The translations under genes and the position numbers were made by a program. Shown here one piece after another: positions 17,101 through 31,493 of a DNA stretch of 64,000 nucleotides. The stretch lies in sequence record NC_070962.1, one strand, 5' to 3'. Under the pieces are notes generated by a model that did no database searches, was not told the DNA's origin, and saw nothing but the letters and a program-made list of their open reading frames with translations. How positions within the stretch are numbered: position 1 is the stretch's first letter; each line of letters opens with the position of its first letter.

Positions 17101-20100
17101 GGGGTATCAAATAGTTATTATAATTATGAAAGTGGTAGATTCTCTACATTATATGGTGACTATACTGGAACTGAAAATGACGTTAAGAGAAGTTTTGAAC
17201 TAAGACATCAGGGTGATTTAATTTTTGAAAGAGTATTTGATTCAACTGCTTTAGGAACAACTGTTTCTACTGATGAAAATGTTTTAATTCTTCCTAACCA
17301 TTTCTTTGTTACAGGTGAATTAGTAAGATATACAGTTCCAAATGAAGACGATATTCGTGTAGGAATTGCTACTACATCAGTAGCTGGTGTTGGTGTTACC
17401 GATAAACTTCCTACGGATTTGTATATTGTTAAGGTTAATGACAGTAAAATCAAATTTGCCGATAGTGCAGAAAATGCTCTGAAGTTTAATCCAGAGACAT
17501 TGACACTATCAAGTGTTGGTGTTGGAACACAACATAAGATAACATCAACAAATAAGGATGCTAAGGGTATCTTTACCATCGATAACATGATGCAGTCACC
17601 TTTGGTCGCATTGGCAATTACTACATCTGTTGCTGATGATATTGCACTAACAGAAACTTTAATCAATACTGCTGGAATTACATCATTCTTTGCAAATGAT
17701 ATTATTCAGATTGATGATGAAGTGATGTTGATTGAAACTGTTGGTGTCGGCACTCAGGATAAAGTAAGAGTCAGAAGACCTTGGATGGGTACTGAACTTG
17801 GAATTCATACAGCAGGTGCATTAGTAACTAAACTAAAAGGTGATTATCAAATTACTGGATCAGTAATTAACTTTACTTCACCACCATATGGTAAAGTTCC
17901 AATAACTGTTGATTTAAACCAGTTTGGTGTTCCATTTGTAGATCCTTCAGAAAGAGATTATACTGGTATTACAACTAACTCATACTTCCACGGAAGAACA
18001 TTTATGAGATCTGGTATTACCGACGAAACTGAAGAGACTTATACTAAGAACTATAGATTTGATGATATTTCTACCAAGTTTACTGGCATTAGAACTGCGT
18101 TTGATATGACTGTTAATGGTCAAGACGTTCTTGGTATTTCGACAGATAATGCCATTGTTCTTGTCAAGGATATCTTCCAGCAACCAACAAGACCTGGAGT
18201 ATCTTCAATTGCAGGTAATTATGAGTTTGTAGAAGTTGGTGGAAAAACTAAGATCCTATTTGACGGATCTATCTCTTCTGATGATTTCACTGCAGTAGAT
18301 GGTCAAGATATTAATGTTCCAAATCTACCAATTGGAGGAATTATCGTAAATATTGGATCTACAACAGGTCTTGGATATCAACCTCTAGTTGCTGCGGGTG
18401 GTACTGCTACAATTTCTGGATTTGGTTCTATCACATCCATCAGCATTGGAAATAGTGGTTCTGGATACAGACCTGGCATTCAGACTCATATTAATGTAAT
18501 TGCAGAAACATCTAGTTCCGTTTCCATAATTGGTTATGCAACTGCTCTTAATGGACATATTACAGGAGTTGCTATTACAAATCCAGGAACAGCATATACT
18601 AGTATAAATCCACCAAGAATTAGATTCGATTCTCCACTAAGTTATACTGATATTCCTCTGATCTATTCTAGTGATTCTCCAAATCAAGGAATTGGAAGAA
18701 CTGCATCTATCGATATGTTTGTTAGTAGAGATACTAGTGTAGGTGAATTTAAGTTCAACAATAATGGTTATGCTTATGGTCAGGGTGAAATCCTAACTGT
18801 TGCAATTGGTGGAACAACAGGTATTCCTACAGATACATCTAAGACATTTGATGAATTCCAAATTACTGTTAATGAAACGCATAGTGATGAATTTAACTCT
18901 TGGGCAATTGGACAACTCCAACAGTTAGATAGTTTAGATGATCAATTTGATGGTATCAGAAGAGTATTCCCAATTTCTTTCCAAGGTGATAGACTCTCAA
19001 TTAGAGCAAGACCTGGTAGTAATATTGATGTATCTGCAACTCTTTTAATCTTCATTAATGATATCTTACAAGTTCCAAATCAAGCATATACCTTCAAAGG
19101 TGGTAGTTTGATTATCTTTGCAGAACCAATTCCTAAAGAGTATACTTCAAGAATTGTTTTCTATAGAGGAACTAGAGATGTTGATGTTGAAGAAGTTGAT
19201 ATTGTAGAACCTATTGAAGTTGGTGATAAAGTTAAGATTATGTCCGACATTGCTTTCCAAACCGAGGATAAGAGAACTGTAGAAGACATCCTATCTTCCG
19301 ATATTCTTCTCACAAACCCATATAGTGGTATTGGAAGATTAAATGATGAAACAATTGAAAGACCACTGATGGCATGTAAGCAGACTGAAGATCTCTTTAT
19401 TAACGGTGAATATGTAGGAAAAGATAGAAGACTGTATGAACCATACATCTTCCCAACAACAAACCTAATTCAACCAGTAGGTATCGATACTACTGTTGCT
19501 TGGGTAGAAGGAACTGCAACATTCTTTGATAATAAAAAAGAAAACCTTGCTGAGAAAAAATTACAACAGATTCAAATTATATCTCAGGATGTGACACAAG
19601 TTGGATTTGCGACAGTTGTTATTTCTGGTTTAGGATCAATTACAAGTATTACTATCAGTAATCCTGGAACTGGATATACATTTGCACCACAAATTGCGAT
19701 TGGACCTCCAGCACCTGGTGGTACAAATGCAACTGCTGAATGTACTATTGCCAATGGTTCTATTAATGTAATCAATGTCACCAATAATGGTGCTGGTTAT
19801 ACTGGATCTAACGCACCTTATGTAAATATTGAACCACCAAGAGTTTCACGTGAACCAATCAGACAAGTTCAATATGATGGAGATTTTGGTACTATTGTTT
19901 CTGTTGCTAATACGAATGTCGGTGTCGGTTCTACTGCATTAGAATTAAGTCTTTACATTCCACATGATTCTGTTGTTAGAAATCTCGGAGTTAATGATTC
20001 TGGTTTGACAACTTCAGGCATCACTGGTCTTGTAACAAGTTATTATTTTACTGCTTCTAGAACAAATGTTGGTAATGGTATTACTGCATTCTATAATGAT

Positions 20101-20499
20101 GGAAATACTCTGAGCATTTCTACTGATAAGTTCAATAATATCTTCCAAGTTTATGATATTGATAGAACTACAGAGTCTGTTCCAGGAATTGGAGTTACTG
20201 ATATCGTTAAGGTTACTACATTAGTAGAATATCCAATTGATCTTGCAGAAAATCTTGGCACATTTGACAATGATCAAGAAACTTTTGATTCTACCGTATT
20301 GACTTTTGATAATGGGGGTGAAGATAATGGTTACTTTGGAAACTTCTCTTGGGGAAGAATTAACTGGCATCCAACTAAGAGTAGAAAGCAACCTCTAGAG
20401 TTTACTTCTTATCATGAAAATGGTTTTGTTGGAATTTCTACTTCACCATTTATTCGTAGAACATTCCCTCTAAGAACTAAACTATATACTCAATATTGA
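8137..20499 (+). CDS. gp7: giant baseplate wedge initiator (gp7-like) with repeated beta modules and a YHYH-like domain
   Basis: N-terminus ESQIPDFINDEFPLFKDFLRQYF and FYKTKGT..GFRILFRVLY; position between gp6 and gp8; 4120 aa. Confidence 0.75.
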   Translation: MDISRIRLSQILESQIPDFINDEFPLFKDFLRQYFEANEIAGGSYDLLSNIDKYVNLNTLTLTPRDTRSTEDFEYDDTTLTVESTYGFPNKYGLLRLNPSFDGERYYGGEIVTYTSKTDTEFKGIVRNFSGITEVGDEVVFSDSVIDESSNFYYNGTFVQNLSSVFLVEFLNKLKSQIAPGFENRTLNYNVNDRLFLSRTSDFYKTKGTAEGFRILFRVLYNEPVDVIIPSTNIFESSASSNRKTRDLVLYVDDQETDYTDLILHRTIKQPTDSIDESSDLSAYGTITNVEKIERNGVIYYVVSLDSDYDKDISVSGTVFGEFVPTPTTKVTEDFKLNLDGSYPEFLNVDSTIGFDDASSLDVYNIINGETFVNTISYNLRTSTEFYGVTSEVAIPRGTLLSSRRYAFVEFDNRTVYFRVTGILSQIIPDKSSYFSEGDPIKFNSVGLKEDTKKYNDWTFNCNPTYNISNLELQDSINRRYKFNLDGNYDLSLFDKFFLIDNNNNSYNVIISARESLSEYVITSNSIIDLSARSFTIERKLNKANFDFFPEANNFVTDVQNVWRPIDYNDELFVASSSLPNYRNENLTTNDKRITFSANIPSDRSTNKELKIGQDATAQIPEKTHSFYTGDSIIYSEDDDDEENTNRLSIPNGRYYVTVVDNKTIKLSTSLNRVYTKEYVSITGNVTDNTFYYSDFFDIEKVLNIEEPFVLKSKRCIKRILPPIDQSTNETTKPGKIGIFKNGVELLNYKSKNNIFYGGLESIEVLSSGDGYDIINPPSLDIFDGSNADGLNNGGIGATGNFVVQGSVVDIKILGGGYNYTETPTVNVSGGNGKGCVIEPVMETYTHGVTIDASSGFNVGISSNTIISLEDHLFSPGEKILYNCELNNQEIGGLKNKAIYFVGVVDNTSFTLHKSIVDAKNNLNPIDITEFGEGNHKFDSVKKKKRIGSLNVTYSSDDFTYRKVSYDPSVVSTPIDYYTNAITIPSHGFNNGEIVIYESSTTEISGLSSGTSYYVTKVDNDSFKLSSLGIGTLPKNHYYNEKTFVEMTTPGVGRQYFRYPNIEVNITPSGQDVSSVEPQVLPIVRGQIKEVFLESNGVGYGCTNIFNYERQPQITAEPGKLASAKPFIVDGEIKGVIIQNSGQKYVSTPSVQIFTDGEGGFGADLIPIVDNDGRLSDVLVKNGGADYNDATEIEIVSAGSGAKFKAKIYNWNVNEVERALNSNQIYDDDGFLHQDSTIPIEDAEDHGLLQYTHCYAPRKLRQTIYNKKVVNGRTTFNPDLILDRLGREINSTSHSPILGWAYDGNPIYGPYGYTNRDGSGGVKLMQSGYRKRTLTNRPSVTVYPLGFFCNDYEWFSDGDLDEFNGRFCVTPDYPNGTYAYFATVGDNDSIFKNYKLPTFPYVIGDKFKSKPIEFNFVSRLNQDTFFSDLLGDDIPYNYINYNLIRNVTPHNLAGVDGKYNYIFDPSQYITVDSKVKSVTSGSVDNVIIFEGGKDFKVGDRIIFADSGEGTTRPVAKVASIGGTDATSVSVAVSSFNNAELVPSPSTGGVVAICSYPHNSYTGPGKINDLNNQSYFSDELIVYNRDLKIAGFGTDNIVIDLPSVTGIVTYINVFGLESTQNIIPVLPNDIFKIEYGLFNEEVKVLNIDFKNSRLRVQREVNGTIGTSYPVGTALSEDPRKFIIKNESPSDSSNRFNTQLYFNPKESVGVGIGTTLSISNPGAGSTQIFVAGDRIYLPNNTLRVNDKIYYEYDNGPITVESFGDNFNLQKDRPYYAYPFPNGYIGISSRPVGVGSTGPVGVGSITELLSFTGFGAGDNHSFYTRYNDVHAVDITTFEVTVNTSKNHNLVFDDPITVTCEPNIEKTLEVFYNQENAKFAVGKFDFVHADINPKFNTITLTNHGLDNGQKLILESTAPPGGMVNNGVYVVGVVNENTIKLYHTNNGGVVNIVNQSTGRLLVVNPQLNLIRNKTLKFDLSDFSLSYVRNNIRYPAFNLKFYRDKELTHEFLSSSKDKTFSVIKTGRIGVTLDANVKLICDDEFPTKLYYVLEPLKSTQVPVAYSLSSIDTDMNNVITFNNSPISGTYNVRKPTNTSFSYRIAERPDSDNYVTGLSTIRYSTISTTASGPINEVSFISTGSNLIKVPLIEKVDSISGVDSILFPRTDSIGIAKNIEINDIGFDFPTDPTLIPRAYTPSIYKIDPLTSIDSIDVLEKGYRYTILPDLVLLDGFTNKIVTDVDLRYIEEDGFKVDIVKNTKNLYDVEPRLLPINNTNGYKILTLTYDSGSKDATVILDVVGFSTITAWPFPVGSEFMVEGVVTKDPDNDEGYNSSDYNYKKLFTVKTADPNIGGQVPSFTFNMGDFVIKNSPGIFNDLITSGRVIPQSFFPQFKVNRIANKYFTDEIVTNGTSEDIVVSWDVKNELLKIFTSFPERYKVGDVMRGKTSQSSGTLTEVVGISSVSYITGASNAERYKPFDRKGFLNDETQRLHDSDYYQYFSYSLKSEVGITSWKEPVESLIHPAGFKKFSELQVISDKDDQIGISSLGIGADQNESGFLGISNFSSYYDLNCVHDIDLVTENNILNKTSDEIRFNSLILVDYFESIGNRVLIVDDISDQFNSNPRPTAFVTVDTFSLRKFRSKKYVMFTSNKKFPGERQMIIVNVLHNNTYGFLTQYGRVETNNIHGYFDVGVFEDNGLLLFYPLEYRYSDFSISGYQYAIANSITGVSTHYIGDSNSIGFAGIQTAYLPQGTSTSTKIVGIDSSYTSAKVLVTLESSDLQYYQYDEFNIVHDGTNIHNIEFSTLATDNFANQDVSLGIGTYQFEYNGNDVEVRLTPNSGLSTAYDVSSTVVAISNTSRTSIGSSLFNTTLTTVGLGTTVSISPFAGVNTSIQIIDFDPQYKGFNAYVSIEDMTNNIVQMSELVFTHNETDAYITEFGRVSNRGIFEDVGLGTFTTYVDGSTGRARLEFVPYPADPGFTREIEVRIFVGSLNLVDLGVSNSYYNYESGRFSTLYGDYTGTENDVKRSFELRHQGDLIFERVFDSTALGTTVSTDENVLILPNHFFVTGELVRYTVPNEDDIRVGIATTSVAGVGVTDKLPTDLYIVKVNDSKIKFADSAENALKFNPETLTLSSVGVGTQHKITSTNKDAKGIFTIDNMMQSPLVALAITTSVADDIALTETLINTAGITSFFANDIIQIDDEVMLIETVGVGTQDKVRVRRPWMGTELGIHTAGALVTKLKGDYQITGSVINFTSPPYGKVPITVDLNQFGVPFVDPSERDYTGITTNSYFHGRTFMRSGITDETEETYTKNYRFDDISTKFTGIRTAFDMTVNGQDVLGISTDNAIVLVKDIFQQPTRPGVSSIAGNYEFVEVGGKTKILFDGSISSDDFTAVDGQDINVPNLPIGGIIVNIGSTTGLGYQPLVAAGGTATISGFGSITSISIGNSGSGYRPGIQTHINVIAETSSSVSIIGYATALNGHITGVAITNPGTAYTSINPPRIRFDSPLSYTDIPLIYSSDSPNQGIGRTASIDMFVSRDTSVGEFKFNNNGYAYGQGEILTVAIGGTTGIPTDTSKTFDEFQITVNETHSDEFNSWAIGQLQQLDSLDDQFDGIRRVFPISFQGDRLSIRARPGSNIDVSATLLIFINDILQVPNQAYTFKGGSLIIFAEPIPKEYTSRIVFYRGTRDVDVEEVDIVEPIEVGDKVKIMSDIAFQTEDKRTVEDILSSDILLTNPYSGIGRLNDETIERPLMACKQTEDLFINGEYVGKDRRLYEPYIFPTTNLIQPVGIDTTVAWVEGTATFFDNKKENLAEKKLQQIQIISQDVTQVGFATVVISGLGSITSITISNPGTGYTFAPQIAIGPPAPGGTNATAECTIANGSINVINVTNNGAGYTGSNAPYVNIEPPRVSREPIRQVQYDGDFGTIVSVANTNVGVGSTALELSLYIPHDSVVRNLGVNDSGLTTSGITGLVTSYYFTASRTNVGNGITAFYNDGNTLSISTDKFNNIFQVYDIDRTTESVPGIGVTDIVKVTTLVEYPIDLAENLGTFDNDQETFDSTVLTFDNGGEDNGYFGNFSWGRINWHPTKSRKQPLEFTSYHENGFVGISTSPFIRRTFPLRTKLYTQY

Positions 20500-21887: not shown

Positions 21888-23456
21888 ATGTCTGCAATCG
21901 TAACAGATCAACTTAGAATATTGAATGCAAGGAATTTTGTAACAGAAATTACTTCTCTTGATAATTCATATTATGCTTATGTTGGATTAACAAATCCCGA
22001 CGATTATTTGGGAAGTTGGGATGAAGATCCTCCTGCACCAAAAGATAATTTTGACCAGGAAAATCATAATTGGGACACTATTGTTGGATTAAAGAAAATT
22101 AATCCCGATAATGTAAGATTTGCAGTTAAAAAAAATAACTGGACATCTGGTATTACCTATGACATGTATAGGCATGACATTAATCGTGATAAAGTATCTC
22201 AACCATCACTTGCCACTAGTTTATATTCTGCAAACTACTTTATCGTAAATAAAGATTTTAAAGTTTATATTTGTTTGCAAAATGGAACAGATCCAGAAAA
22301 CCCAAATGGAAGACCGTCTCTTGACGAACCAACTTTTATTGATTTAGAACCAAGAAGTGCTGGTACAAGTGGTGATGGATATATTTGGAAATATTTGTTT
22401 ACTATTAATCCAAATGATATTATAAAATTTGATACTTTAAATTATATTACAATTCCAACGGATTGGTCAACTGCAGATGAATACCAATCTGTTAGATTAA
22501 ATGCTGCAAATAGTGGGCAATTAAAGATTGCTACTATTAAAACAAGAGGAGTTGATGTAGGATCACCAAACCAAATTTATACTTGTGATATAGTTGGTGA
22601 TGGAACTGGTGGTGAAGCAACAATTGTAGTTGATAATCAATCAAAAGTTGATTCTGTAACCATTTCAAATGGAGGTTCTGGTTATACTTATGGTCGTATC
22701 GATCTTACCACTGGCAATTTTCCCCAAAATGCAACAACAACTCCAACATTTGATGTAATCATTCCACCAAAGGGTGGACATGGAGCAGATATTTATAGAG
22801 AACTTGGTTGTACAAAAGTTTTAATTTATTCACAAATTAAAAATGATGCAACAAACCCAGACTTTATTGTCGGAAATAGAGTTGCAAGAATCGGAATTAT
22901 TGCAAACCCAGAAGAATTCAATTCTACAGAATCTCTTTCTAAGGACCAAGCAAGTGCTTTATATGCATTAAAGTTGACTGGAGTAAATAATCAAAATGAT
23001 TATATTAATGCATTATTCTCTCCTAATGGCACTATAACACAAACAGTATCTGCTGGATCAACTGCGGTCGGTAGAGTTGTTTCATATAATAAAAATACTG
23101 GGGTATTAAAATATTGGCAAGATAGAACGAATCATGGTTTTGATTATGATTTAGATAATTTGGATGTTACTGCAACATATGGAAATAATTTAGTTGAATT
23201 TACTTCAACTCCAGGAACTGGTGGATCTTTGAATATTAATGGATCTAATCAAGATCTTAAAATTGACGATACATTTAATGATAATAAATTCACTATAAAT
23301 AACCTAAGTTATTATCTTGGACAATCATTTACTGATGGTATTTCCGCACCAGAAGTGAAAAAATACTCTGGGGATCTAGTTTACATTGACAATAGACCAT
23401 CTATCACAAGATCTGAAAATCAAAGAGAAGATATCAAAATCGTATTGCAATTCTAA
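21888..23456 (+). CDS. gp8: baseplate wedge subunit gp8
   Basis: NWTSG.TYDMYRHD, VYICLQNG, DGYIWKYLFTI and the C-terminal YIDNRPSITRSENQREDIKIVLQF; TAAATA at 21864-21869. Confidence 0.9.
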   Translation: MSAIVTDQLRILNARNFVTEITSLDNSYYAYVGLTNPDDYLGSWDEDPPAPKDNFDQENHNWDTIVGLKKINPDNVRFAVKKNNWTSGITYDMYRHDINRDKVSQPSLATSLYSANYFIVNKDFKVYICLQNGTDPENPNGRPSLDEPTFIDLEPRSAGTSGDGYIWKYLFTINPNDIIKFDTLNYITIPTDWSTADEYQSVRLNAANSGQLKIATIKTRGVDVGSPNQIYTCDIVGDGTGGEATIVVDNQSKVDSVTISNGGSGYTYGRIDLTTGNFPQNATTTPTFDVIIPPKGGHGADIYRELGCTKVLIYSQIKNDATNPDFIVGNRVARIGIIANPEEFNSTESLSKDQASALYALKLTGVNNQNDYINALFSPNGTITQTVSAGSTAVGRVVSYNKNTGVLKYWQDRTNHGFDYDLDNLDVTATYGNNLVEFTSTPGTGGSLNINGSNQDLKIDDTFNDNKFTINNLSYYLGQSFTDGISAPEVKKYSGDLVYIDNRPSITRSENQREDIKIVLQF

Positions 23457-23461
23457 GAATT

Positions 23462-26400
23462 ATGCCACAACTCACTAACCTCAACACCTTTCCATATTTT
23501 GACGATTTTGATGAGTCAAAGAATTTTTATAAAGTTCTTTTTAAGCCTGGACAACCTGTTCAAGCTAGAGAATTAACCACAATTCAATCTTTATTGCAAA
23601 ATCAGATTGAAAATTTTGGAGACCATATTTTTAAAGAAGGTTCGGTTGTTATTCCAGGTTCTCTAGTAGTTAAACCAAACCAAATTACTTTAGAACTTGA
23701 AAAAACATTTAATGGACTAGATATTACCCAATATTTGCCATCTTTAGTTGGAAAAACTGTTGTAGGTGAAGATACTGGTGTTAAGGCAAAGATAGAGGCA
23801 TATCAAGGAACATACGTTTTTGTAAATGTTACTGAAACTGGACTAGATAACGAATCTCAGGATTTTATTGCTGGAGAAGCAATTTATATTGAAGAGACTA
23901 TCCCTTTAACTGATGCTGCGATTACTAGTTTTGTTGCTGGATCCTCAGTTGCATCAATTAGAGATGTTGCTGAGGGTTGTATTTCAAAATTAACAGAAGG
24001 TGTATTTTACCTTAAAGGATACTTTGTACAGGTTCCTGAGCAAACATTAATTGTATCTGTAGATGAACCAGAACCAACATTTAAACTTGGTTTTGAGATA
24101 AAAGAAAATTTTGTAACTTCATATGATGATCAAACATTATATGACAATTCCCAAGGATTTTTAAATTTTGCTGCTCCTGGCGCAGATCGTTTAAAAATAG
24201 ATGCAGAATTAATTGCGGTTATTGATGGGGATGAGATTCCTCAAAATTTTGTGGAACTTGCAGATGTTTTAAATGGAAGTGTTTTAACCTCAAAAGTTGA
24301 AAATCCTGAGTATAATATTCTTGCTGATGAAATGGCAAGAAGAACCTATGAGGAAAGTGGAGATTACTATGTAAAACCATTTACATTAGAGGTAAAAAAT
24401 ACATTACAAGATTTTAAAGGTAGTGATGGTCTTTATACTTCAGATGAAAGTACCTTAAGTGGTGAACCTCCAAGAGAAGATTTAGCTGCATATCAAATTT
24501 CTGCAGGAAAGGCATATGTTCAAGGTTATGAGGTAAATATTCAATCTGGTGTAGTTTTAGATATTGATAAACCAAGAACTACTAAAGAATTTAAACAGCA
24601 AGCAATTGAATATTCAACTGGGTCAACACTAAGACTTAATAATGTATATGGTGCTCCAAAAATTGGGTTATCAACATCATATACAGTATCACTAAGAAGT
24701 GAAAGAGTTGGTAGTGCTGCTACTATTGCTGCTGGAAAAGAAATTGGTTTAGCAAGGGTTTATGATTATGCTCTCGAAACTGGATCTTATGATACGTCCA
24801 ATTCTGCCACAAACTCTTGGGATTTAACTTTATTTGACGTTGTTCCATTCACCGATCTAAGTTTGAATGAAAATGTAACAACATTATCAACACCAACCTT
24901 TATCAAAGGTAAGTCTAGTGGTGCTGTTGGATTTTTAAGATATGATGTTTCTAGTTCTACTGGTATTATTACGGCATATAACGTAACTGGCAACTTCATT
25001 AAAGGTGAGGAACTTTTATTTGATGGGCAAGAAAGTGATAGAATTGTTTTGTCTTCTACTAACTATGGTATTTCTAATGTTAAATCAATTCATGGTGAAA
25101 TTGGAATTACTACATTCTCTGGTGACGTAAAACAAACTTCTGTATTAGAACTTGGACAATGTGACTTTAGTGGTGGTGGAGTTACAGTAGCACAAGCTGA
25201 CCGTGATTTTAGTAAAAACTTTGTAGTTGGTGATCTAATTTCTTTCAAAAAATCAGGAAATACAGTTCCTTCTTTCAATAGAGTAACTGCGGTAACTACA
25301 GATAATCTAACTGTAGAGGCAGTTCAAAGTGTTTCTGGTGTAGTTGATGGAGCATTGTTTGGTAATGGTACAACAAATGTATCTAAAGTAACCACCAGGT
25401 TAGGTGATAATGGATCCGACACCTTATACACACCTTTACCAAAGAAAAACATTGCGAATGTAGATCTAAAAGATGCTGTAATTACTATTAGAAAAACATT
25501 CAATACGTCAATTGTTGCTGATGCTACTGGAGGTAGAATAACGATTCTTCCAGCAGAACTAGAAACTGGTGAAACTTTCTTACCTTTTGATGAAGAGAGA
25601 TATATCGTTGTTAATAAGAATGGTCAAACAGAAGCATTAACTGAAGATAAGTTCACAATTACAAGTGGAAGTAGAGAGTTAATCATTAAAGGTTTGTCTA
25701 TTGTTGGTGATGCAACTCTAATTGCTACATTAAGAAAATCCCAGGTAAAGGCACAAAATAAGATTAAAAACAGAGTTAAGACGATTATTGTTGATAAATC
25801 ATCAACTGCTGGATCTGGAATTGGTGCCACAACTCTCAATGATGGTCTTACCTATGGAAACTATCCATATGGTACAAGAGTTCAAGATGAAGTCATTTGT
25901 CTTTTAGAACCAGATGTAACTAAGATTCATGCAATATATGAGTCTTCTACTACTGGATCTCCACAATTACCAAGACTTACCCTAAGTGATATTAGTAGTT
26001 TTAATGGTAGTGTTGAAGATGCACTAAATGGTGAGGAAATTGTTGGAACAACTAGTGGATGTGTTGCAGTTTTGGTTAATAAAATTTCATCTTCAACTGC
26101 TGAAGTTGTTTATATTAACGGTAAAAAATTCAATGTCGGTGAAGAAATTACATTTAAAGAATCTTCAATTACTGCTGATATTGATGTGGTTGTTGATGGA
26201 GACAATGACGTAACTGCAAAATATGTATTGAATGCTGGACTAAAATCTACTATTTACGATTACTCAAGAATTAAGAGAAAACCAAATATTCAAGCACCTA
26301 CAAAAAAATTAGCAATTGTATATGAATATGCAAACATTGATTCTACCGACACTGGAAATCTTTTAGTAGCAAATTCATATGAAAATTTTGACTACAAAGA

Positions 26401-29400
26401 CATACCTATTACAGATGGAGAAAAGCAGAGTGATATTTTAGATATTAGACCAAAAGTAAAATCATATTCTGTAGCAGAAAATGTAAGATCACCTTTTGAG
26501 TTTTTGGGTAGATCTTTTGCATCAACACAAAACTCAAATCTTAATGTATTAGCATCTGATGAATCTATCACTGTAGATTATTCAATATATCTTGGAAGAA
26601 TTGACAGAATCTATCTAACAAAACAAAAGTCTTTCCAAGTAGTTAAAGGAGTTCCAGAGGAATCTCCACAAAAACCAGTTCCATTGGAAAATGCTATGGA
26701 GGTTGCTACCGTAGCTTTCCCTCCATACTTAGAAAAAGTTCAAGATGCAAAAGTTTCAATTATATCTCATAAGAGATATCAAATGAAAGATATTGCTCTA
26801 TTAGAGCAAAGAATTAAAAATCTAGAATATTACACTCAACTTTCATTACTTGAAACAAATACTCAAAATCTTGAGATTAAAGATTCTGATGGTGCTAATA
26901 GATTTAAATCTGGTTTCTTTGTTGATAACTTTACTTCCGTTCAAAATCAAGTCAGCACTATTTCTGCCAAAAACTCTATTGATGCAAGAAATAATGAACT
27001 AAGGCCAGCATCTTATACTACACAATTAGACTTATTACTCGGATCTACACAATTAACTGGAATTAATGGTGAATTGGATCCAAATGCTGATCCAAGATAT
27101 GTTACTGATTTAATCGGTGAAAATATTAGGAGGTCTACAGTTGATCCTAATGGGTCTGTTGGTACAGATGGTATGGGTGTTATTACACTAGACTATGAAG
27201 AAGTTCCATTTATTAGCCAACTTACAGCAACTAGAGTTGAAAATGCTGCTCCTTACTTTGTAAATTTCTACAAAGGAAAAATTACACTAAATCCATCTTC
27301 AGATATCTGGATTGATCAAGCTAGAGTAGAAACTCAAACTATTGATGGTCTTATTGGTGGTTTTAGTCAAACAACTATTCAAGCTAATGCATCTGATTTA
27401 GATCCACAAGCAGGATGGTCTCCAATTACTTGGGGTGGATGGAATGAAAATTGGACTGGAACATCAACATCCGATACTGTTATTACTGCAAGTGACTCAG
27501 CAACTCTCCAAGGTGGTAGTGGAACAAGACCAGGCAGTACAACTGCTTCGGCATCTGTAACCACAAGAACAACAACAAGAACTGGAACTGCAACTCAATC
27601 TGGTACTTCTACAAGAGTTCAAACTACACCAGGAAATACTATTAATCTTGGGGATAAAGTTATTTCTTCTGATGTCTCATCCTTTATGAGATCTAGAAAT
27701 ATTGAAATTATTTCAAGAGGAATGAAACCTCATACAAGACTATATTCATTCTTCGGAACATCTTCAGTAACTAAGTATTGTGTTCCAAAACTGATTGAAA
27801 TTGAAATGATTTCTGGAACATTTAATGTTGGAGAAATTGTTCAATCTGCTGGAACTTCCTCAGTTAGCCCATCAGTAGTTTCCGATTCTCCATATATTGT
27901 ATTCAGAACCGCAGTTTGTAATCATAGAACTGGACCATTTAATGATCCACTGGATATCTACACGGTTAATCCATATACCCGTGAGGAGATGCCAGATCTA
28001 TATTCAACATCTTCAACTACGTTGAATGTCGATTTAACGTCTCTAAGTATTGCACCTATGGGTGATTATTATGGATATATTGCTGAAGGAATGATCCTTC
28101 AGGGAAGAAGTAGTGGTGCTAGAGCAAGAGTCAGTTCTCTCAGACTTACCACAGATAATGTGGGAACGATGCAAGCATCTTTCTACATTCCGAATCCAAA
28201 TGCTCCTGGAGCTCCAAGATTTAGAACAGGATCACTTACCTTTAAATTAAGTGACTCTCCATCTATTGATCCTATTGAAGGAACTGCATACACTGGTGGT
28301 CAGAAAGATTTCTTCTCATCTGGAACAATTCAAAATGTTCAAGGTCAAGTAATTTCAACTCGTAATGTTGAGTTTACCACTGCTCAAACTACTCAATCGA
28401 GATCTATTAGTGATGAAAGTCAATCTATTGTAGATATTGATGTTAATGTTGATGTAACACTACCTCAACCTGTACCAATTCCTCGTCCACAACCACAACC
28501 TAGACCTCAACCACAACCTAGACCTTCACCTAGACCTCAACCAAATCCAAGTCCTAGACCTCAACCTAGACCTGTACCTAACCCTACACCAAATCCACGT
28601 CCATCTCCTAGACCTAGACCAAATCCACGTCCTAGACCTCAGCCACGTCCTAGACCAAATCCTAGACCACAGCCACGTCCTAGACCAAGACCTAGACCCA
28701 GACCTAGACCAAGGCCACGTCCTAGACCAAGACCAAGACCTAGACCAAGGCCACGTCCTAGACCAAGACCTAGACCAAATCCAGCTCCACGGAATGATGA
28801 TGATGATCCATTAGCACAGTCTTTTACAGTTGGTAATTCTCAGGATCCAACTGGTATATTTGTTACTTCAGTCGATCTATACTTTAGAACGACATCAACG
28901 ACAGGTGAGACTTGTTTTGTTGAATTGAGACCAATGGTCAATGGATTCCCATCAAGTGATGAAATTTATCCATTATCTCAGGTAGTACTAAATGGATCTC
29001 AAGTTGAAGTTTCTGAAGATGCAAGTGTACCTACAACGGTAACATTCCCAGCACCTGTTTATCTTGAAGGAAATAAAGAACATTGTATAGTCGTTGGTTC
29101 AAACTCGACTGATTATCAACTTTGGATTTCTAGACTTGGTGAAGTAGATGTATCTACCTTATCCAGACCAGAATCTGAGCAAGTTCCTATTACTAAACAA
29201 TCTACACTTGGATCACTATTTAAATCACAAAATAGTAGAACATGGACTGCTAGCCAATATGATGATCTTAAGTTTAGTATTAATAGGGCAAACTTTGTAG
29301 AAAATGGAAACATTAGTTTCTATAATCCAGATTTAGCACTTGGAAATAGACAAGTTGCAACTTTGAAGAAAGATTCCTTAGATGTTTCTTCTAGAAGAAT

Positions 29401-31273
29401 TATTGTTGGACTTGGTACAACTGCAAGAAATTGGGGTGATGATATTGTTCCTGGTAATACCGTTATTCAGGATAATTCAAATGCATCTGGTAATTTTGTG
29501 ATGGGTCTTGGCATTGCTACTGGCACAATGTCAGTCACTAATGCTGGACTTGGACTCACACCTTCCACTGGTTTCTTCCAATACGACAATGTTCCACTAA
29601 CCAAACTAACTGGTAGAGGTGAAAATGCAACTGCAAATATTCATGTAAACAATGGTGTTGCAGCTGCTGCTACAATCTCTGATGGTGGTAATGGATTCAA
29701 AGTTGGTGATGTTCTAACTGCTACCATTGGTGGTGGAGTTGGTAGAAATCTGCAACTTTCCGTGACAGATACTTTTGGTATCAGTGAACTCATTCTTGAT
29801 CAAGTTCAGGGTGACTTTAAAGTTGGTGGTGGAAATACTCTAAGATACATCAATTCAAGTGGTGTAACTACCGAGTTTACTGATCAAGGATCAACAGATG
29901 TTCTAACAGCACCAAGAATAGTAACTGACGGATTGCACATTAAGGTCAATCATCTAAATCATGGTATGCATTCTGATACTAATAATGTTGTTATTCAAGG
30001 TGTTACTTCAGATGTCCCTGTAGTAAGACTTGAAGGTGATTATGATAGAACATCAACATCTGATCTTGTTATCTCCGATGCATCAAACTTTGAGAATTTT
30101 GAAGGAGTTGGTGTTGGAACCACCAATCCAGGATATATTAAAATTGAAAATGAAATTATTTCCTATACATCAGTAACTGGCAATACTCTTGGTGGTATTA
30201 CACGATCTGTAGATTCAACTTTTGCTGGTGGATATGAAGATCAATCAATTGTGTCTAAGTATGAGACATCAGGTATTTCTTTAAGAAGAATTAATAAAAC
30301 CCATGCTTTACAAGATGCAACTATTTCGGAAAGTAAGGGTCTTGATCATTACAATCTAAAAATTGATACATCAGAAAATGGCATTGATAGGTCAAATTCC
30401 ACTTCTTTCCCAACTTTATATTTGAATCAATCAAAATCTACTGGTGGTGAATCTGTAACTGCAACTCAGAATATCCATTATGAAATTATGCAACCTGTTG
30501 TTCAAACCATGGTTCTACAAAGAACTAATTTGACTGCAAGAGCAAGAACAGTGACATCAACAAGTATTGATGGTAATGAAGTGTCATTCTTAGATGCTGG
30601 TTATGAAAATGTCGTTCTAAATGACGATAATTATTTTGATACTCCAAGAATGATTGCATCCAAGACAAATGCCGATTCATTATTAGCAACATTACCTGGA
30701 AATAAATCATATGAACTTGAATTGAACATGAGATCAGCTGATCCAAGACTTTCACCTGTCATTGACTTAGATAGAATTGGGTCCATCTTTGTTTCAAACA
30801 GAGTTAATAATGTAGTTACTAATTTCAATACCGATCCACGTGTTGCAACCGTAGATGATGATCCAAGTGCATTTGTTTACGCAACAAAAGCAATCGGTCT
30901 AGAAATTCCCGCAAATAATATTAAATTACTATGTGCTGCATACATTAATAACTTCTCCGACATTAGAGCATTCTATGCATTAACTAATGATCCATCAGAG
31001 GATTTAATTTACTACCCATTCCCAGGTTATGATAATTTACTTGAAACTGGTCAGGTAATTGATTCTTCTAAGAACAGTGGTAGACCTGATAAGTTGGTTC
31101 CACCAACAGACAATAAAGGATTTGCATCTACTGCATTAGTATTCAAAGATTATACCTTTACTATTGAAAATCTACCGTCCTTCAAGTTCTTCAGTGTGAA
31201 ACTAGTTGGAACCTCAACCAACCAGTGCTATCCACCAAGAATTCGTGACCTAAGAGCAATCGCATTCGCATAA
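23462..31273 (+). CDS. VrlC/DUF4815-like large virion structural protein
   Basis: PYFDDFD..KNFYKVLFKPGQPVQARELT, FAAPGADRLKI, NRFKSGFFVDNF, DPLAQSF and a terminal PRIRDLRAIA; carries a Pro/Arg tract. Confidence 0.8.
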   Translation: MPQLTNLNTFPYFDDFDESKNFYKVLFKPGQPVQARELTTIQSLLQNQIENFGDHIFKEGSVVIPGSLVVKPNQITLELEKTFNGLDITQYLPSLVGKTVVGEDTGVKAKIEAYQGTYVFVNVTETGLDNESQDFIAGEAIYIEETIPLTDAAITSFVAGSSVASIRDVAEGCISKLTEGVFYLKGYFVQVPEQTLIVSVDEPEPTFKLGFEIKENFVTSYDDQTLYDNSQGFLNFAAPGADRLKIDAELIAVIDGDEIPQNFVELADVLNGSVLTSKVENPEYNILADEMARRTYEESGDYYVKPFTLEVKNTLQDFKGSDGLYTSDESTLSGEPPREDLAAYQISAGKAYVQGYEVNIQSGVVLDIDKPRTTKEFKQQAIEYSTGSTLRLNNVYGAPKIGLSTSYTVSLRSERVGSAATIAAGKEIGLARVYDYALETGSYDTSNSATNSWDLTLFDVVPFTDLSLNENVTTLSTPTFIKGKSSGAVGFLRYDVSSSTGIITAYNVTGNFIKGEELLFDGQESDRIVLSSTNYGISNVKSIHGEIGITTFSGDVKQTSVLELGQCDFSGGGVTVAQADRDFSKNFVVGDLISFKKSGNTVPSFNRVTAVTTDNLTVEAVQSVSGVVDGALFGNGTTNVSKVTTRLGDNGSDTLYTPLPKKNIANVDLKDAVITIRKTFNTSIVADATGGRITILPAELETGETFLPFDEERYIVVNKNGQTEALTEDKFTITSGSRELIIKGLSIVGDATLIATLRKSQVKAQNKIKNRVKTIIVDKSSTAGSGIGATTLNDGLTYGNYPYGTRVQDEVICLLEPDVTKIHAIYESSTTGSPQLPRLTLSDISSFNGSVEDALNGEEIVGTTSGCVAVLVNKISSSTAEVVYINGKKFNVGEEITFKESSITADIDVVVDGDNDVTAKYVLNAGLKSTIYDYSRIKRKPNIQAPTKKLAIVYEYANIDSTDTGNLLVANSYENFDYKDIPITDGEKQSDILDIRPKVKSYSVAENVRSPFEFLGRSFASTQNSNLNVLASDESITVDYSIYLGRIDRIYLTKQKSFQVVKGVPEESPQKPVPLENAMEVATVAFPPYLEKVQDAKVSIISHKRYQMKDIALLEQRIKNLEYYTQLSLLETNTQNLEIKDSDGANRFKSGFFVDNFTSVQNQVSTISAKNSIDARNNELRPASYTTQLDLLLGSTQLTGINGELDPNADPRYVTDLIGENIRRSTVDPNGSVGTDGMGVITLDYEEVPFISQLTATRVENAAPYFVNFYKGKITLNPSSDIWIDQARVETQTIDGLIGGFSQTTIQANASDLDPQAGWSPITWGGWNENWTGTSTSDTVITASDSATLQGGSGTRPGSTTASASVTTRTTTRTGTATQSGTSTRVQTTPGNTINLGDKVISSDVSSFMRSRNIEIISRGMKPHTRLYSFFGTSSVTKYCVPKLIEIEMISGTFNVGEIVQSAGTSSVSPSVVSDSPYIVFRTAVCNHRTGPFNDPLDIYTVNPYTREEMPDLYSTSSTTLNVDLTSLSIAPMGDYYGYIAEGMILQGRSSGARARVSSLRLTTDNVGTMQASFYIPNPNAPGAPRFRTGSLTFKLSDSPSIDPIEGTAYTGGQKDFFSSGTIQNVQGQVISTRNVEFTTAQTTQSRSISDESQSIVDIDVNVDVTLPQPVPIPRPQPQPRPQPQPRPSPRPQPNPSPRPQPRPVPNPTPNPRPSPRPRPNPRPRPQPRPRPNPRPQPRPRPRPRPRPRPRPRPRPRPRPRPRPRPRPRPRPNPAPRNDDDDPLAQSFTVGNSQDPTGIFVTSVDLYFRTTSTTGETCFVELRPMVNGFPSSDEIYPLSQVVLNGSQVEVSEDASVPTTVTFPAPVYLEGNKEHCIVVGSNSTDYQLWISRLGEVDVSTLSRPESEQVPITKQSTLGSLFKSQNSRTWTASQYDDLKFSINRANFVENGNISFYNPDLALGNRQVATLKKDSLDVSSRRIIVGLGTTARNWGDDIVPGNTVIQDNSNASGNFVMGLGIATGTMSVTNAGLGLTPSTGFFQYDNVPLTKLTGRGENATANIHVNNGVAAAATISDGGNGFKVGDVLTATIGGGVGRNLQLSVTDTFGISELILDQVQGDFKVGGGNTLRYINSSGVTTEFTDQGSTDVLTAPRIVTDGLHIKVNHLNHGMHSDTNNVVIQGVTSDVPVVRLEGDYDRTSTSDLVISDASNFENFEGVGVGTTNPGYIKIENEIISYTSVTGNTLGGITRSVDSTFAGGYEDQSIVSKYETSGISLRRINKTHALQDATISESKGLDHYNLKIDTSENGIDRSNSTSFPTLYLNQSKSTGGESVTATQNIHYEIMQPVVQTMVLQRTNLTARARTVTSTSIDGNEVSFLDAGYENVVLNDDNYFDTPRMIASKTNADSLLATLPGNKSYELELNMRSADPRLSPVIDLDRIGSIFVSNRVNNVVTNFNTDPRVATVDDDPSAFVYATKAIGLEIPANNIKLLCAAYINNFSDIRAFYALTNDPSEDLIYYPFPGYDNLLETGQVIDSSKNSGRPDKLVPPTDNKGFASTALVFKDYTFTIENLPSFKFFSVKLVGTSTNQCYPPRIRDLRAIAFA
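28463..28792 (+). repeat. Pro-X dipeptide repeat tract (110 aa), including a pure (PR)17 run at 28673-28774
   Basis: Read directly from the sequence. Synonymous codons vary (Pro cct/cca/ccc; Arg aga/agg/cgt). Confidence 0.95.
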
Positions 31274-31274
31274 C

Positions 31275-31493
31275 ATGTACCTAAAAGTAGAAAATCATTC
31301 AAATCTTTATCGTGATTCATCCACAAATGCAATTGTCAATACCGATATGACAGAATATCAAAACTATATGAACTCCCTCAAACATAAAAAGAGGGAGTTG
31401 AAACGAATGGAAAAACTTGAGGATGATGTCAAATCCGTCAAGGATGATCTCAAAGAAATTAAGGATCTGCTCAAATGTCTAATCAAAGAATAA
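31275..31493 (+). CDS. small coiled-coil hypothetical protein
   Basis: LYRD..TNAIVNTD..EY followed by the heptad pattern LEDDVKSVKDDLKEIKDLLK. Confidence 0.75.
   Translation: MYLKVENHSNLYRDSSTNAIVNTDMTEYQNYMNSLKHKKRELKRMEKLEDDVKSVKDDLKEIKDLLKCLIKE

What the first reader, a model, noticed from the sequence alone, without database searches (positions are those of the whole stretch)
28463..28792. 110-aa Pro/Arg tract with (PR)17 just before the conserved DDDDPLAQSF junction
Seen: a Pro-X tract grading from PQ/PN/PS into 17 uninterrupted PR units (28673-28774), followed at once by NDDDDPLAQSF. The codons are mixed (cct/cca/ccc; aga/agg/cgt), so it is not a fresh slippage microsatellite and appears to be kept at the protein level. 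Known: PRP-rich peptides (oncocin, Bac7, PR-39) cross bacterial membranes and bind the ribosome exit tunnel and DnaK; poly-PR forms a rigid cationic polyproline-II rod; Asp-Pro bonds are labile. Inference: a virion-borne membrane-penetrating or LPS-binding rod, a ruler-like spacer, or a releasable ribosome-inhibiting peptide.
Basis: partly seen in the sequence, partly recalled or inferred. Interest (0 to 1): 0.7.

Follow-up and report, generated by a model that had tools for sequence, protein, structure and literature searches.

The report
Proline-arginine leash in phage baseplate protein
The (PR)17 run is real, but it is the lineage-specific filling of a hypervariable hinge in a known type of phage baseplate protein (the cyanophage relative of the staphylococcal phage 812 "tripod" protein), most likely an extended spacer and not a conserved antimicrobial-type peptide.

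Summary
The window is Synechococcus phage S-SCSM1, bases 1-64000. The tract is there as described. Residues 1668-1777 of ORF19 (23462-31273, 2603 aa, annotated "VrlC", virion protein) have proline at 55 consecutive alternate positions. They end in 17 unbroken PR units (28673-28774), followed by N-DDDD and DPLAQSF.

ORF19 carries Pfam DUF4815 and matches the tripod protein (gp119) of phage 812 in the same order along its length. It also sits in the same place, just after the gp8-like gene. DPLAQSF is the first strand of the lectin-like "leg" domain (Z 19-20, rmsd about 1.8 Å to 812). In 812 that domain swings 88 Å when the tail contracts.

In 112 homologs the segment before DPLAQSF is 20-435 aa, 0-49% proline, with net charge -41 to +104. 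It can be P-X with X = A/V/I/T/K/R, poly-Pro, (NVT)n repeats, a coiled coil or an inserted domain. The C-terminal module stays at 822±6 aa.

The "mixed codons" recur in tandem 18-42-nt units, so the array grew by duplication.

Best reading: an extended, polyproline-II-type leash, up to about 34 nm, at the hinge before the leg domain. The spacer idea is supported. The releasable ribosome-inhibitor idea is not. A role for the +32 charge remains open.

The parts
23462..31273 (+). ORF19 of Synechococcus phage S-SCSM1 (QFG06275.1, annotated 'virulence associated protein VrlC (virion protein)'), 2603 aa. It is a DUF4815 protein and a homolog of the tripod protein of Herelleviridae baseplates.
   Evidence: Pfam DUF4815 at 205 bits against a cut-off of 30. 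phrog_358 matches end to end. The only PDB relative by sequence is phage 812 gp119.
23462..27328 (+). N-terminal body (aa 1-1289), matching 812 tripod residues 4-610 in the same order but with large insertions.
   Evidence: BLASTP segments 6-60/4-58, 209-375/106-234, 1036-1131/396-491 and 1240-1289/561-610.
27782..28321 (+). Beta-rich domain just upstream of the hinge (aa 1441-1620). It ends in the conserved ...QVISTRN strand, which was used as the upstream anchor when measuring the linker.
   Evidence: AF2 model m520417c50195 has strands over residues 4-179, with block pLDDT 89-96 in the best parts and 51-59 towards the end. The anchor was found in all 121 proteins by phmmer.
28322..28462 (+). 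Unstructured Ser/Thr/Asp-rich lead-in (aa 1621-1667). It is conserved within the window's own clade and ends in ...DVTL before the first proline.
   Evidence: No secondary structure and pLDDT below 50 for model residues 178-228. Clade comparison.
28463..28792 (+). The (P-X)55 tract, aa 1668-1777, net charge +32, with no Gly, Asp, Glu or Pro-Pro. Proposed to be an extended polyproline-II-type leash.
   Evidence: AF2 gives no secondary structure, pLDDT about 52-63.
28595..28792 (+). Array of six tandem DNA units of 18-42 nt, each beginning CCACGT CCTAGA or CCACGT CCATCT. It holds a 35-nt exact repeat at 28700 and 28736.
   Evidence: Logan contigs break at 28729/28741.
28673..28774 (+). The 17 unbroken Pro-Arg units (aa 1738-1771).
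   Evidence: The longest PR run in the linkers of the 111 other homologs is 4.
28793..28825 (+). N-DDDD followed by DPLAQSF (aa 1778-1788), the start of the leg-like domain. D, P, A, Q and F are invariant in 57 aligned homologs.
   Evidence: The motif is at 812 gp119 residue 792 with no linker before it.
28799..29299 (+). Leg-like lectin-fold domain (aa 1780-1946).
   Evidence: VIA-align Z 19.1-20.3, rmsd 1.7-2.0 Å over 150-153 residues, 33-34% identity to 812 tripod chains (9euj_G, 9eui_Q, 9euf_0). The next best match is the Cwp84 lectin-like domain, Z 11.6-12.1. The 812 paper names Cwp84 as the fold of the leg domain.
29300..31270 (+). The rest of the C-terminal module (aa 1947-2603), all-beta domains. 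From DPLAQSF to the end, the module is 822±6 aa in 103 full-length homologs.
   Evidence: AF2 model mb40db68984f9, mean pLDDT 85.3. Lengths. Only weak jelly-roll matches for the last 140 aa, Z 6-7.
21888..23456 (+). ORF18, a T4 gp8-like baseplate wedge / arm-segment homolog immediately upstream. This is the same gene order as in phage 812.
   Evidence: PDB sequence hit to T4 gp8, E 1.9e-7. phrog_438. 812 gene order.
8137..20499 (+). ORF15, a 4120-aa gp7-like baseplate wedge protein. By gene position it is the candidate counterpart of the 812 arm scaffold, to which tripods dock.
   Evidence: phrog_2885 'baseplate wedge subunit'. S-SM2 annotates the equivalent gene as gp7. No PDB sequence hit.

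Best explanation
ORF19 is the cyanomyovirus version of the baseplate-periphery tripod protein. An N-terminal body is anchored on the gp7/gp8-type baseplate arm. A distal module of about 820 aa begins with a lectin-like leg domain.

The (P-X)55 tract fills the hinge directly before that leg domain. Proline at every second residue, with no glycine and no hydrophobic core, cannot fold. It should form an extended, protease-resistant polyproline-II-like strand of up to about 34 nm (110 residues at 3.1 Å each; textbook value).

The tract would then work as a leash. It lets the distal host-contacting module move far from the baseplate body when the baseplate rearranges. The same hinge allows an 88 Å move in phage 812 without any linker.

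Its length and side-chain make-up are free to change, and they change by tandem duplication of 18-42-nt units. The (PR)17 run is the latest product of that process.

Shown: the sequence, the family, the domain boundaries, the variability and the repeat structure. Inferred: the extended conformation, the trimeric tripod arrangement in this phage, and the leash function.
For: Identity and context:
- The window is S-SCSM1. ORF19 is annotated as a virion protein, and the paper reports 45 virion proteins found by mass spectrometry.
- The gene order gp6-like, gp7-like, gp9/10-like, gp8-like, DUF4815, gp13, gp14 is seen here and in 9 related contigs. It parallels wedge, arm scaffold, arm segment, tripod in phage 812.

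Family:
- Pfam DUF4815 at 205 bits.
- Matches 812 gp119 in the same order along its length.
- The leg-domain fold matches at Z 19-20, with Cwp84 next, as the 812 paper describes for the leg domain.
- In 812 the leg domains move 88 Å on contraction, and the C-terminal domains stretch toward the cell wall.

Hinge:
- In 812, DPLAQSF follows the preceding strand directly.
- In 112 cyanophage-type homologs the intervening segment is 20-435 aa, while the C-terminal module is 822±6 aa. Linker length correlates with total length at r = 0.75.
- Proline-rich fillings recur: 34 of 112 have at least 20% Pro, and 20 have P-X runs of 8 or more. X can be A/V, V/I/L, T/K or K/R.
- Linker class changes at least 20 times on the tree.

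Conformation: AF2 gives no secondary structure for aa 1621-1782, between two confident domains.

Variation:
- Near-identical environmental variants change only X residues (S1715N, R1769N). One proline codon change is synonymous.
- One variant has a net in-frame 12-nt deletion just after the last PR unit.

Analogy: TonB's proline-rich central region is likewise highly divergent between species and is proposed to be an extended polyproline-II helix (PMC7098700).
Against: - No structure or biophysics exists for this tract. AF2's low confidence cannot tell an extended rod from a random coil.
- The trimeric tripod arrangement and the docking to the gp7-like protein are extrapolated from a Gram-positive phage whose leg domain is 33% identical.
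- ORF19 is 2.3 times longer than gp119 and has no LysM-type hook.
- The domain just upstream of the hinge found no confident structural counterpart in 812.
- If only reach mattered, the extreme +32 charge would be unexplained. The nearest relatives also keep basic fillings (+26 to +104), which hints at something beyond spacing.
- The copy number of the 36-nt unit is not independently verified.
Confidence: 0.6

Rival explanations
1. Neutral minisatellite growth at a permissive site. The hinge tolerates almost any insertion. The PR array is slippage or unequal-recombination debris with no function tied to its length, stiffness or charge, beyond not disturbing the two flanking modules.
For: - Linker length of 20-435 aa with any composition, including whole inserted domains.
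- The 3' half is six tandem units, with a 35-nt exact repeat.
- (PR)17 is unique. The next longest PR run among the other 111 homologs is 4.
- Length polymorphism among near-identical strains.
- Many relatives manage with about 20-45 aa here.
Against: - Proline is kept at all 55 alternate positions, including the 5' half, where codons and X residues are not recent copies.
- The whole 15-member clade around the window keeps long fillings (74-413 aa), and 11 of the 15 are at least 20% Pro, through roughly 30-45% divergence of the flanks.
- The observed strain differences hit only X positions.
- Every repeat unit is a multiple of 6 nt.
Confidence: 0.22
2. A cationic adhesion element. The +32 rod (three per trimer, if tripod-like) binds the anionic cell envelope (LPS, exopolysaccharide) as a first, reversible contact. 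Or it is stowed electrostatically on the strongly acidic baseplate and released on triggering. This is compatible with the leash model and adds a role for the charge.
For: - The tract is +32, inside a protein whose N part is -63 and C part -34. Neighbouring baseplate and fibre proteins have pI 4.3-4.8.
- The window groups with P0005 and P0006 (support 95), whose fillings are +104 and +42. P0004 nearby is +26.
- Arg is replaced by Lys in those relatives, so the charge is kept rather than the residue.
- PR-rich fillings arose again in a second clade: P0048, P0078 and P0079.
Against: - Across the family the net charge runs from -41 to +104, and many linkers are neutral or acidic.
- The three nearest relatives by identity (P0001-3) are about neutral.
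- AGA/AAA-type codons are favoured in this AT-rich genome, so K/R enrichment in a duplicating array could be mutational.
- No binding data exist.
Confidence: 0.15
3. A releasable PrAMP-like peptide. The tract is cut out, for example at Asp-Pro, enters the host and blocks the ribosome exit tunnel or DnaK.
For: Composition only. Repeated PRP triplets resemble Bac7, PR-39 and oncocin (own knowledge). The protein is in the virion.
Against: - The tract is embedded in a 2603-aa structural protein, with no precursor architecture.
- The D-P belongs to the invariant first strand of the leg domain. It is equally conserved in phages with no linker, such as 812 and S-SM2.
- The closest relatives carry non-proline or neutral fillings.
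- There is no Pfam hit apart from a sub-threshold repeat match to procyclin.
- Acid lability of Asp-Pro needs low pH, not seawater (own knowledge).
- A baseplate-periphery protein has no known route into the cytoplasm.
Confidence: 0.02
4. An assembly artefact. The repeat length or the tract itself comes from misassembly of a low-complexity region.
For: A 35-nt exact repeat lies inside the tract. Contigs built from 31-nt words break there, so the unit copy number is not independently fixed.
Against: - Overlapping contigs from two independent runs (X1; X2, an estuary metagenome) are identical to the window across 27800-29600.
- Two further runs hold close variants of the same tract.
- The reading frame is intact, and both flanks are conserved.
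- Relatives from unrelated metagenomes carry analogous tracts at the same site.
Confidence: 0.03

Closest known systems
Tripod protein gp119 of Staphylococcus phage 812 (PDB 9EUF, 9EUI, 9EUJ; EMBO J 2026, PMC13433997) and its homolog gp106 of Listeria phage A511
   Same: - DUF4815 family.
- Matches in the same order from the N-terminus to the leg domain.
- DPLAQSF starts the lectin-like leg domain (33-34% identity, rmsd about 1.8 Å).
- The gene lies directly after the gp8-like arm-segment gene.
   Different: - 2603 aa against 1152 aa, with large insertions in the body and about 500 extra residues after the leg domain.
- No LysM-like hook detected.
- The host is Gram-negative.
- 812 has no linker before DPLAQSF, whereas S-SCSM1 has about 160 unstructured residues there, including the 110-aa P-X tract.
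VrlC / T4-like gene cluster 400 structural proteins of marine cyano- and pelagimyoviruses (for example S-SM2 SSM2_099 and the P-TIM68 'putative neck protein')
   Same: They are orthologs: same size class, same position between gp8 and gp13, and regarded in the literature as part of a two-layered baseplate.
   Different: The filling of the hinge differs. S-SM2, SynMITS9220M01 and S-B05 have short Ser/Thr-rich segments, P-TIM68 has (NVT)n-type repeats, and DSL-LC03 has a Lys-rich segment. In the 60 best phage records, only S-SCSM1's own two records span the query's full 733 aa; the other 58 span 538-698 aa.
TonB central proline-rich region, (Glu-Pro)n(Lys-Pro)m
   Same: A P-X dipeptide periodicity with charged X, lying between two functional ends. 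Its sequence diverges strongly between species, but it is almost always proline-rich, and it is proposed to be an extended polyproline-II conformation that spans a distance (PMC7098700).
   Different: An unrelated protein in a different setting (periplasm against virion exterior). TonB mixes acidic and basic halves, while here the tract is purely basic or neutral. This is analogy only, not homology.
Pro-Thr 'PT-box' linkers of glycoside hydrolases, the procyclin (EP)n rod of trypanosomes, and bacterial surface-protein proline-rich regions
   Same: Alternating P-X repeats used as extended interdomain or surface spacers (own knowledge). The only Pfam repeat hit of the tract is procyclin PF05887, at 17 bits against a cut-off of 100.
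   Different: A similarity in composition only. The hit is far below threshold.
Proline-rich antimicrobial peptides (Bac7, PR-39, oncocin) and C9orf72 poly-PR
   Same: PRP-repeat composition and a high positive charge.
   Different: Those are short free peptides or aberrant translation products that act inside cells. This is an internal segment of a virion protein, is not conserved among orthologs, and shows no evidence of release.

Membership tests
DUF4815 / tripod-protein family (812 gp119, A511 gp106, cyanophage VrlC) | Pfam PF16075 match above the gathering score | tested here: met
   205 bits against a cut-off of 30, in 3 stretches. phrog_358 matches end to end.
DUF4815 / tripod-protein family (812 gp119, A511 gp106, cyanophage VrlC) | Sequence similarity to a structurally characterised member, in the same order along the protein | tested here: met
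   Five BLASTP segments in the same order against 812 gp119, from residues 4-58 to 792-951. PDB phmmer E 6.6e-17 and 1.1e-16.
DUF4815 / tripod-protein family (812 gp119, A511 gp106, cyanophage VrlC) | Lectin-like (Cwp84-type) leg domain beginning at DPLAQSF | tested here: met
   Z 19-20 to 812 chains and Z about 12 to Cwp84.
DUF4815 / tripod-protein family (812 gp119, A511 gp106, cyanophage VrlC) | Gene placed right after the gp8-like arm-segment gene in the baseplate block | tested here: met
DUF4815 / tripod-protein family (812 gp119, A511 gp106, cyanophage VrlC) | C-terminal anchor plus LysM-like hook | tested here: not met
   No LysM or other Pfam domain in the C-terminal 800 aa. C-terminal BLASTP against 812 gives E 3.2. 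The last 140 aa give only weak jelly-roll matches. This feature is probably specific to phages of Gram-positive hosts, so it separates a sub-type rather than excluding the family.
DUF4815 / tripod-protein family (812 gp119, A511 gp106, cyanophage VrlC) | Trimer docked on loops of the arm scaffold, 12 per baseplate | not testable with these tools
   Needs cryo-EM of S-SCSM1. Only the virion location is on record, from the GenBank note and the paper's mass spectrometry.
Polyproline-II-type interdomain spacers (TonB-like, PT-box-like) | Long run of proline at a fixed short period, no Gly-X-Y pattern, no hydrophobic core | tested here: met
   55 alternate prolines, 0 Gly, and only 3 aliphatic residues (2 Val, 1 Ile).
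Polyproline-II-type interdomain spacers (TonB-like, PT-box-like) | Lies between two independently folded modules | tested here: met
   Confident AF2 domains on both sides and none in between. The leg domain starts at aa 1780.
Polyproline-II-type interdomain spacers (TonB-like, PT-box-like) | Length and sequence poorly conserved among orthologs while proline-richness recurs | tested here: met
Polyproline-II-type interdomain spacers (TonB-like, PT-box-like) | Extended polyproline-II conformation in solution | tested here: inconclusive
   AF2 gives coil with pLDDT 31-63. This is compatible but not diagnostic. CD, SAXS or EPR is needed.
Proline-rich antimicrobial peptides (PrAMPs) | A short peptide made as, or released from, a dedicated precursor | tested here: not met
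   It is an internal segment of a 2603-aa structural ORF. No flanking processing motif is conserved. The D-P belongs to the folded domain.
Proline-rich antimicrobial peptides (PrAMPs) | Conservation of the active motif among orthologs | tested here: not met
   Replaced by (NVT)n with a coiled coil, by neutral P-A/P-V, by acidic segments, or nearly absent.
Proline-rich antimicrobial peptides (PrAMPs) | Binding to the ribosome exit tunnel or DnaK | not testable with these tools
   Needs a cell-free translation or binding assay.
Collagen-like triple helix (common in phage fibres) | Gly at every third residue | tested here: not met
   No glycine in the tract, and the period is 2, not 3.
Coding minisatellite (in-frame tandem-repeat array) | Tandem DNA units with recent exact copies and length polymorphism between strains | tested here: met
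   TRF periods of 12 to 78 nt. A 35-nt exact repeat. Six units starting CCACGT. A net 12-nt deletion in an environmental variant. All units are multiples of 6 nt, so there is no frame switching.

The most novel reading that the evidence does not exclude
In marine T4-like cyanophages, the hinge before the leg domain of the tripod-like VrlC protein may be a fast-evolving adsorption tuner. Tandem duplication would set how far (20 to over 400 residues) and with what charge (-41 to +104) the distal module is presented. In the S-SCSM1 lineage the poly-cationic P-R/P-K leash would itself make the first electrostatic contact with the anionic cell envelope, or be held on the acidic baseplate until triggering. 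This would contribute to the unusually broad host range reported for this phage (Synechococcus and Prochlorococcus).
Probability: 0.15. Interest if true: 0.6.

Novelty: new variant of a known kind. Interest (0 to 1): 0.35.

Why it matters
VrlC is one of the few proteins shared by all marine cyano- and pelagimyoviruses, but it has had no assigned role beyond "baseplate".

This work links it, domain by domain, to the structurally solved tripod protein of phage 812. That gives a concrete model: a body on the baseplate arm, with a distal lectin-like module that swings out.

It also locates one hypervariable site at the mechanical hinge of that model. If linker length or charge affects adsorption, this site would be a simple, sequence-readable marker of host-interaction diversity in ocean viromes.

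For the finding as written, the main value is negative. The striking (PR)17 is not a conserved antimicrobial-type element. It is a recent duplication product in a tolerant spacer.

Tried and rejected
1. PrAMP or cleavage idea. Rejected on the homolog comparison and on the structural role of D-P.

2. Collagen-like helix. Rejected, because the tract has no glycine.

3. Prolyl-hydroxylase lead.
- ORF16 (20510-21061) is a 2OG-Fe(II) oxygenase lying inside the baseplate gene block.
- It belongs to PF13759, not the P4H-type family, and has no PDB sequence relative.
- A 51%-identical copy sits at the same place next to P0006.
- It is absent next to five other proline-rich homologs (P0004, P0005, P0009, P0047, P0078) and next to three short-linker ones (S-SM2, P0117, P0099).
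- There is therefore no co-variation, and the lead is left open as a side note.

4. Peptide-level mass-spectrometry data for ORF19, which could have tested for cleavage. The supplement held as text lists only gene annotations, not peptides.

5. Domain boundaries of 812 gp119. They are not given in the text, and no supplement is held. The identification of the leg domain therefore rests on the Cwp84 fold match.

6. C-terminal homology to the 812 anchor and hook. Not significant by BLASTP.

7. My first regular expression for the upstream anchor failed. It was replaced by a phmmer anchor.

8. Literature searches for DUF4815 and for proline-rich cyanophage baseplate proteins found nothing on this tract.

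9. Coordinates of the AF2 model are not available to scripts, so no end-to-end distance was measured.
Full report
**What the window is.** A megablast of 27500-30500 finds Synechococcus phage S-SCSM1 (MK867354.2 / NC_070962.1) at 100% identity and the same coordinates. The window is therefore bases 1-64000 of this 228.8-kb T4-like cyanomyovirus. The finding lies in ORF19 (23462-31273, + strand, 2603 aa), annotated "virulence associated protein VrlC (virion protein)". The describing paper reports 45 virion proteins found by mass spectrometry (PMC9602691). Peptide-level data are not in the supplement held here.

**The observation.** It is correct in every detail.
- Residues 1668-1777 (nt 28463-28792) carry proline at 55 consecutive alternate positions.
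- The partner residues grade from Q/V/I/S/N/T into arginine.
- The tract ends with 17 unbroken PR units at nt 28673-28774.
- Then come N-P-A-P-R, N-DDDD and DPLAQSF.
- There is no Gly, Asp, Glu or Pro-Pro pair in it.
- With 4.1% proline elsewhere in the protein, chance is excluded. No other such tract exists in any frame of the window.

**The codon argument needs correction.**
- The codons are mixed, but the mixture is periodic. From 28595 onward the tract is six tandem units of 18-42 nt. Each starts with CCACGT followed by CCTAGA or CCATCT.
- Seven of the thirteen CGT arginine codons of the whole gene lie in the tract, and six of those seven mark the start of a unit.
- Tandem Repeats Finder reports periods of 12 to 78 nt at 67-82% match, plus one 18-nt period at 100% over two copies.
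- A 35-nt stretch is repeated exactly at 28700 and 28736.
- The array therefore grew by duplication of multi-codon units, some of it recent. Mixed codons do not show long maintenance at the protein level.

**Is it an assembly artefact?**
- Contigs from four public runs were laid on 27800-29600. Two runs, a 2025 run of one organism and an estuary metagenome, tile the region with no differences.
- Two others hold variants about 98% identical.
- All contig sets break at 28729/28741, as expected for 31-nt words meeting a 35-nt repeat. The tract is therefore real, but the number of 36-nt units is not independently fixed.
- In the variants, the differences inside the tract are S1715N and R1769N (both X positions) and one synonymous proline change. 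One variant also has a net 12-nt in-frame deletion at 28779-28798.

**What the protein is.**
- ORF19 matches Pfam DUF4815 (205 bits) and phrog_358 end to end.
- The only solved relative by sequence is a 1152-aa DUF4815 chain in PDB 9EUF/9EUI/9EUJ. By its length and the GenBank record, this is the tripod protein gp119 of Staphylococcus phage 812.
- BLASTP finds five matching segments in the same order from the N-terminus to residue 951 of gp119. These include DPLAQSF itself, at gp119 residue 792.
- A511 gp106 and hundreds of other myovirus proteins share the DPLAQSF domain.
- Gene order agrees. ORF14 (gp6-like), ORF15 (4120 aa, gp7-like), ORF17 (gp9/10 N-terminal domain) and ORF18 (T4 gp8 homolog, E 1.9e-7) precede ORF19. 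The neck genes follow.
- In 812 the order is wedge, arm scaffold, arm segment (gp8-like), tripod.
- The same order holds in S-SM2 and in eight metagenomic relatives; a ninth contig is cut off just upstream of the gene.

**The domain after the tract.**
- Two AF2 models were built on alignments of 55-57 homologs.
- The C-terminal module (aa 1778-2603) folds confidently as all-beta domains, with mean pLDDT 85.3.
- The model of aa 1441-1993 has a beta domain, then 160 residues with no secondary structure (pLDDT 31-63), then a beta-sandwich starting at DPLAQSF.
- That sandwich superposes on 812 tripod chains with Z 19.1-20.3, rmsd 1.7-2.0 Å over 150-153 residues and 33-34% identity. The next best match is the lectin-like domain of Clostridioides difficile Cwp84 (Z 11.6-12.1).
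- The 812 paper describes exactly that fold for the tripod "leg" domain (PMC13433997).
- It also reports that on tail contraction the three leg domains detach and move 88 Å. The C-terminal domains then appear to stretch toward the cell wall.
- DPLAQSF is therefore the first strand of the leg domain, and the tract sits at the hinge in front of it.
- In 812 there is no linker at that hinge. The preceding strand runs straight into DPLAQSF.

**What homologs have at this site.**
- A search with residues 1780-2200 found 2514 homologs, of which the best 120 were retrievable.
- The conserved upstream strand was anchored by phmmer and the downstream end by the motif. This let the intervening segment be measured in 112 proteins.
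- It ranges from 20 to 435 aa (median 68), from 0 to 49% proline, and from -41 to +104 net charge.
- Among 103 full-length proteins the C-terminal module is 822±6 aa while the linker is 112±90 aa. Linker length correlates with total length at r = 0.75.
- The fillings include the following:
  - short Ser/Thr-rich segments;
  - poly-proline;
  - P-X tracts with X = A/V (P0009), V/I/L (P0020, P0043), T/K/V (P0004) or K/R (P0005, P0006);
  - Gly/Asp-rich, Trp/Tyr/Arg-rich and (NVT)n repeats;
  - coiled-coil-like segments;
  - inserted DUF4214 domains.
- Six cultured phages were read directly. S-SM2, SynMITS9220M01, S-B05 and S-SCSM2R have short non-proline segments, P-TIM68 has NVT-type repeats, and DSL-LC03 has a Lys-rich segment.
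- No other linker has a PR run longer than 4.

**Phylogenetic pattern.** A FastTree of the leg domain plus the next 250 aa, with the linker excluded, needs at least 20 changes of linker class among 112 rows.
- The window groups with P0005 and P0006 (support 95). Both have long basic proline-rich fillings (+104 and +42).
- P0004 (+26) and the three (NVT)n proteins, which are the most similar of all (71-72% identity), join at the next node (support 99).
- The surrounding 15-member clade mostly starts its linker with the same L/T-P-Q-P-x-P-x-P lead-in.
- Two points follow. An alternating-proline linker is old in this clade and its X residues drift, and the basic character is shared by the nearest two or three relatives but not by all.

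**Interpretation.**
- The best-supported reading is an extended spacer of the polyproline-II type at the mechanical hinge of a tripod-like baseplate protein.
- With proline at every second residue and no glycine the chain cannot fold compactly. At the textbook 3.1 Å per residue, 110 residues could span up to about 34 nm.
- The nearest functional analogue is the proline-rich central region of TonB. It is also highly divergent between species, almost always proline-rich, and proposed to be an extended polyproline-II helix (PMC7098700).
- "Leash" describes it better than "ruler", because the length is not conserved.
- The main rival is that the site simply tolerates insertions and that the PR array is neutral duplication debris. 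The strict retention of proline in the older 5' half, the clade-wide persistence of proline-rich fillings, and the X-only strain differences argue against a purely neutral view, but they do not exclude it.
- A specific role for the +32 charge, set in a protein that is otherwise -97 and among baseplate proteins of pI 4.3-4.8, is possible but untested.
- The releasable ribosome-inhibitor idea fails on the homolog comparison and on the structural role of the Asp-Pro.

**Novelty.** Three things are already known: the protein family, the tripod structure and proline-rich spacers. As far as the searchable literature shows, three things had not been described:
- the domain-level link between cyanophage VrlC and the 812 tripod protein;
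- the hypervariable hinge before the leg domain;
- this extreme poly-PR filling.

I rate it a new variant of a known kind, of moderate to low interest as a single locus and somewhat higher as a family-wide pattern.

Noticed in passing
window 20510-21061 (ORF16); L011:1999-2583: A 2OG-Fe(II) oxygenase gene (PF13759) is inserted inside the baseplate gene block, between the gp7-like and gp9/10-like genes and 2.4 kb upstream of the proline-rich ORF19. A 51%-identical copy sits at the same place next to P0006. It is absent from eight other related contexts, five of them with proline-rich linkers. So no link to proline hydroxylation is supported, and the idea is untested biochemically.
   Followed up: partly
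P0001-P0003, P0089, P0111; L003 (P-TIM68) just upstream of DPLAQTF: A second recurring hinge filling is made of (N-V/I-T)n tripeptide repeats. In P0001-3 a heptad-like charged segment precedes it. The repeat appears in at least two separate clades. Its structure and its relation to the P-X type are unknown.
   Followed up: no
P0070, P0075, P0088, P0092, P0099, P0116 (the 25 residues before DPLAQSF): One clade has a Trp/Tyr/Arg-rich segment (pattern like G-W-Y-x-W-P-Y-x-W-R-Y-R-Y-G-R-W-G-W-C-R-W) directly before the leg domain. This is an unusual aromatic-cationic motif of unknown role.
   Followed up: no
P0010, P0012, P0014, P0016, P0024, P0028, P0029, P0036, P0050, P0057-58, P0063-64, P0067 and others: About twenty homologs carry one or two DUF4214 (PF13946) domains inserted at the same hinge. 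The site therefore accepts whole folded domains as well as repeats.
   Followed up: no
window 8137-20499 (ORF15): A 4120-aa gp7-like baseplate wedge protein with no PDB sequence relative. The equivalents in related contigs carry a YHYH domain. By gene position it would be the arm scaffold to which the tripod-like protein docks.
   Followed up: partly
L011:4696-12840 (GCA_001757045.1 contig MDTC01124007.1): In this metagenomic relative the VrlC gene is called as two adjacent DUF4815 ORFs (431 aa and 2279 aa). This may be a frameshift, a sequencing error or a real split.
   Followed up: no
window 28779-28798, 28604-28605, 28767-28768: Environmental runs (an estuary metagenome and a second organism's run) hold strains about 98% identical whose tracts differ by S1715N, R1769N and a net 12-nt deletion. 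The R1769N strain would have a shorter unbroken PR run.
   Followed up: partly
window 3512-4678: A tryptophan halogenase (prnA-like) gene is annotated in the phage genome upstream of the baseplate block. It is an unusual auxiliary gene and was not examined here.
   Followed up: no
window 31275-31493 (ORF20): Annotated 'prefoldin' in GenBank, but it matches phrog_473 'virion structural protein' and has no Pfam hit. A small ORF of this size follows VrlC in most of the relatives examined.
   Followed up: no
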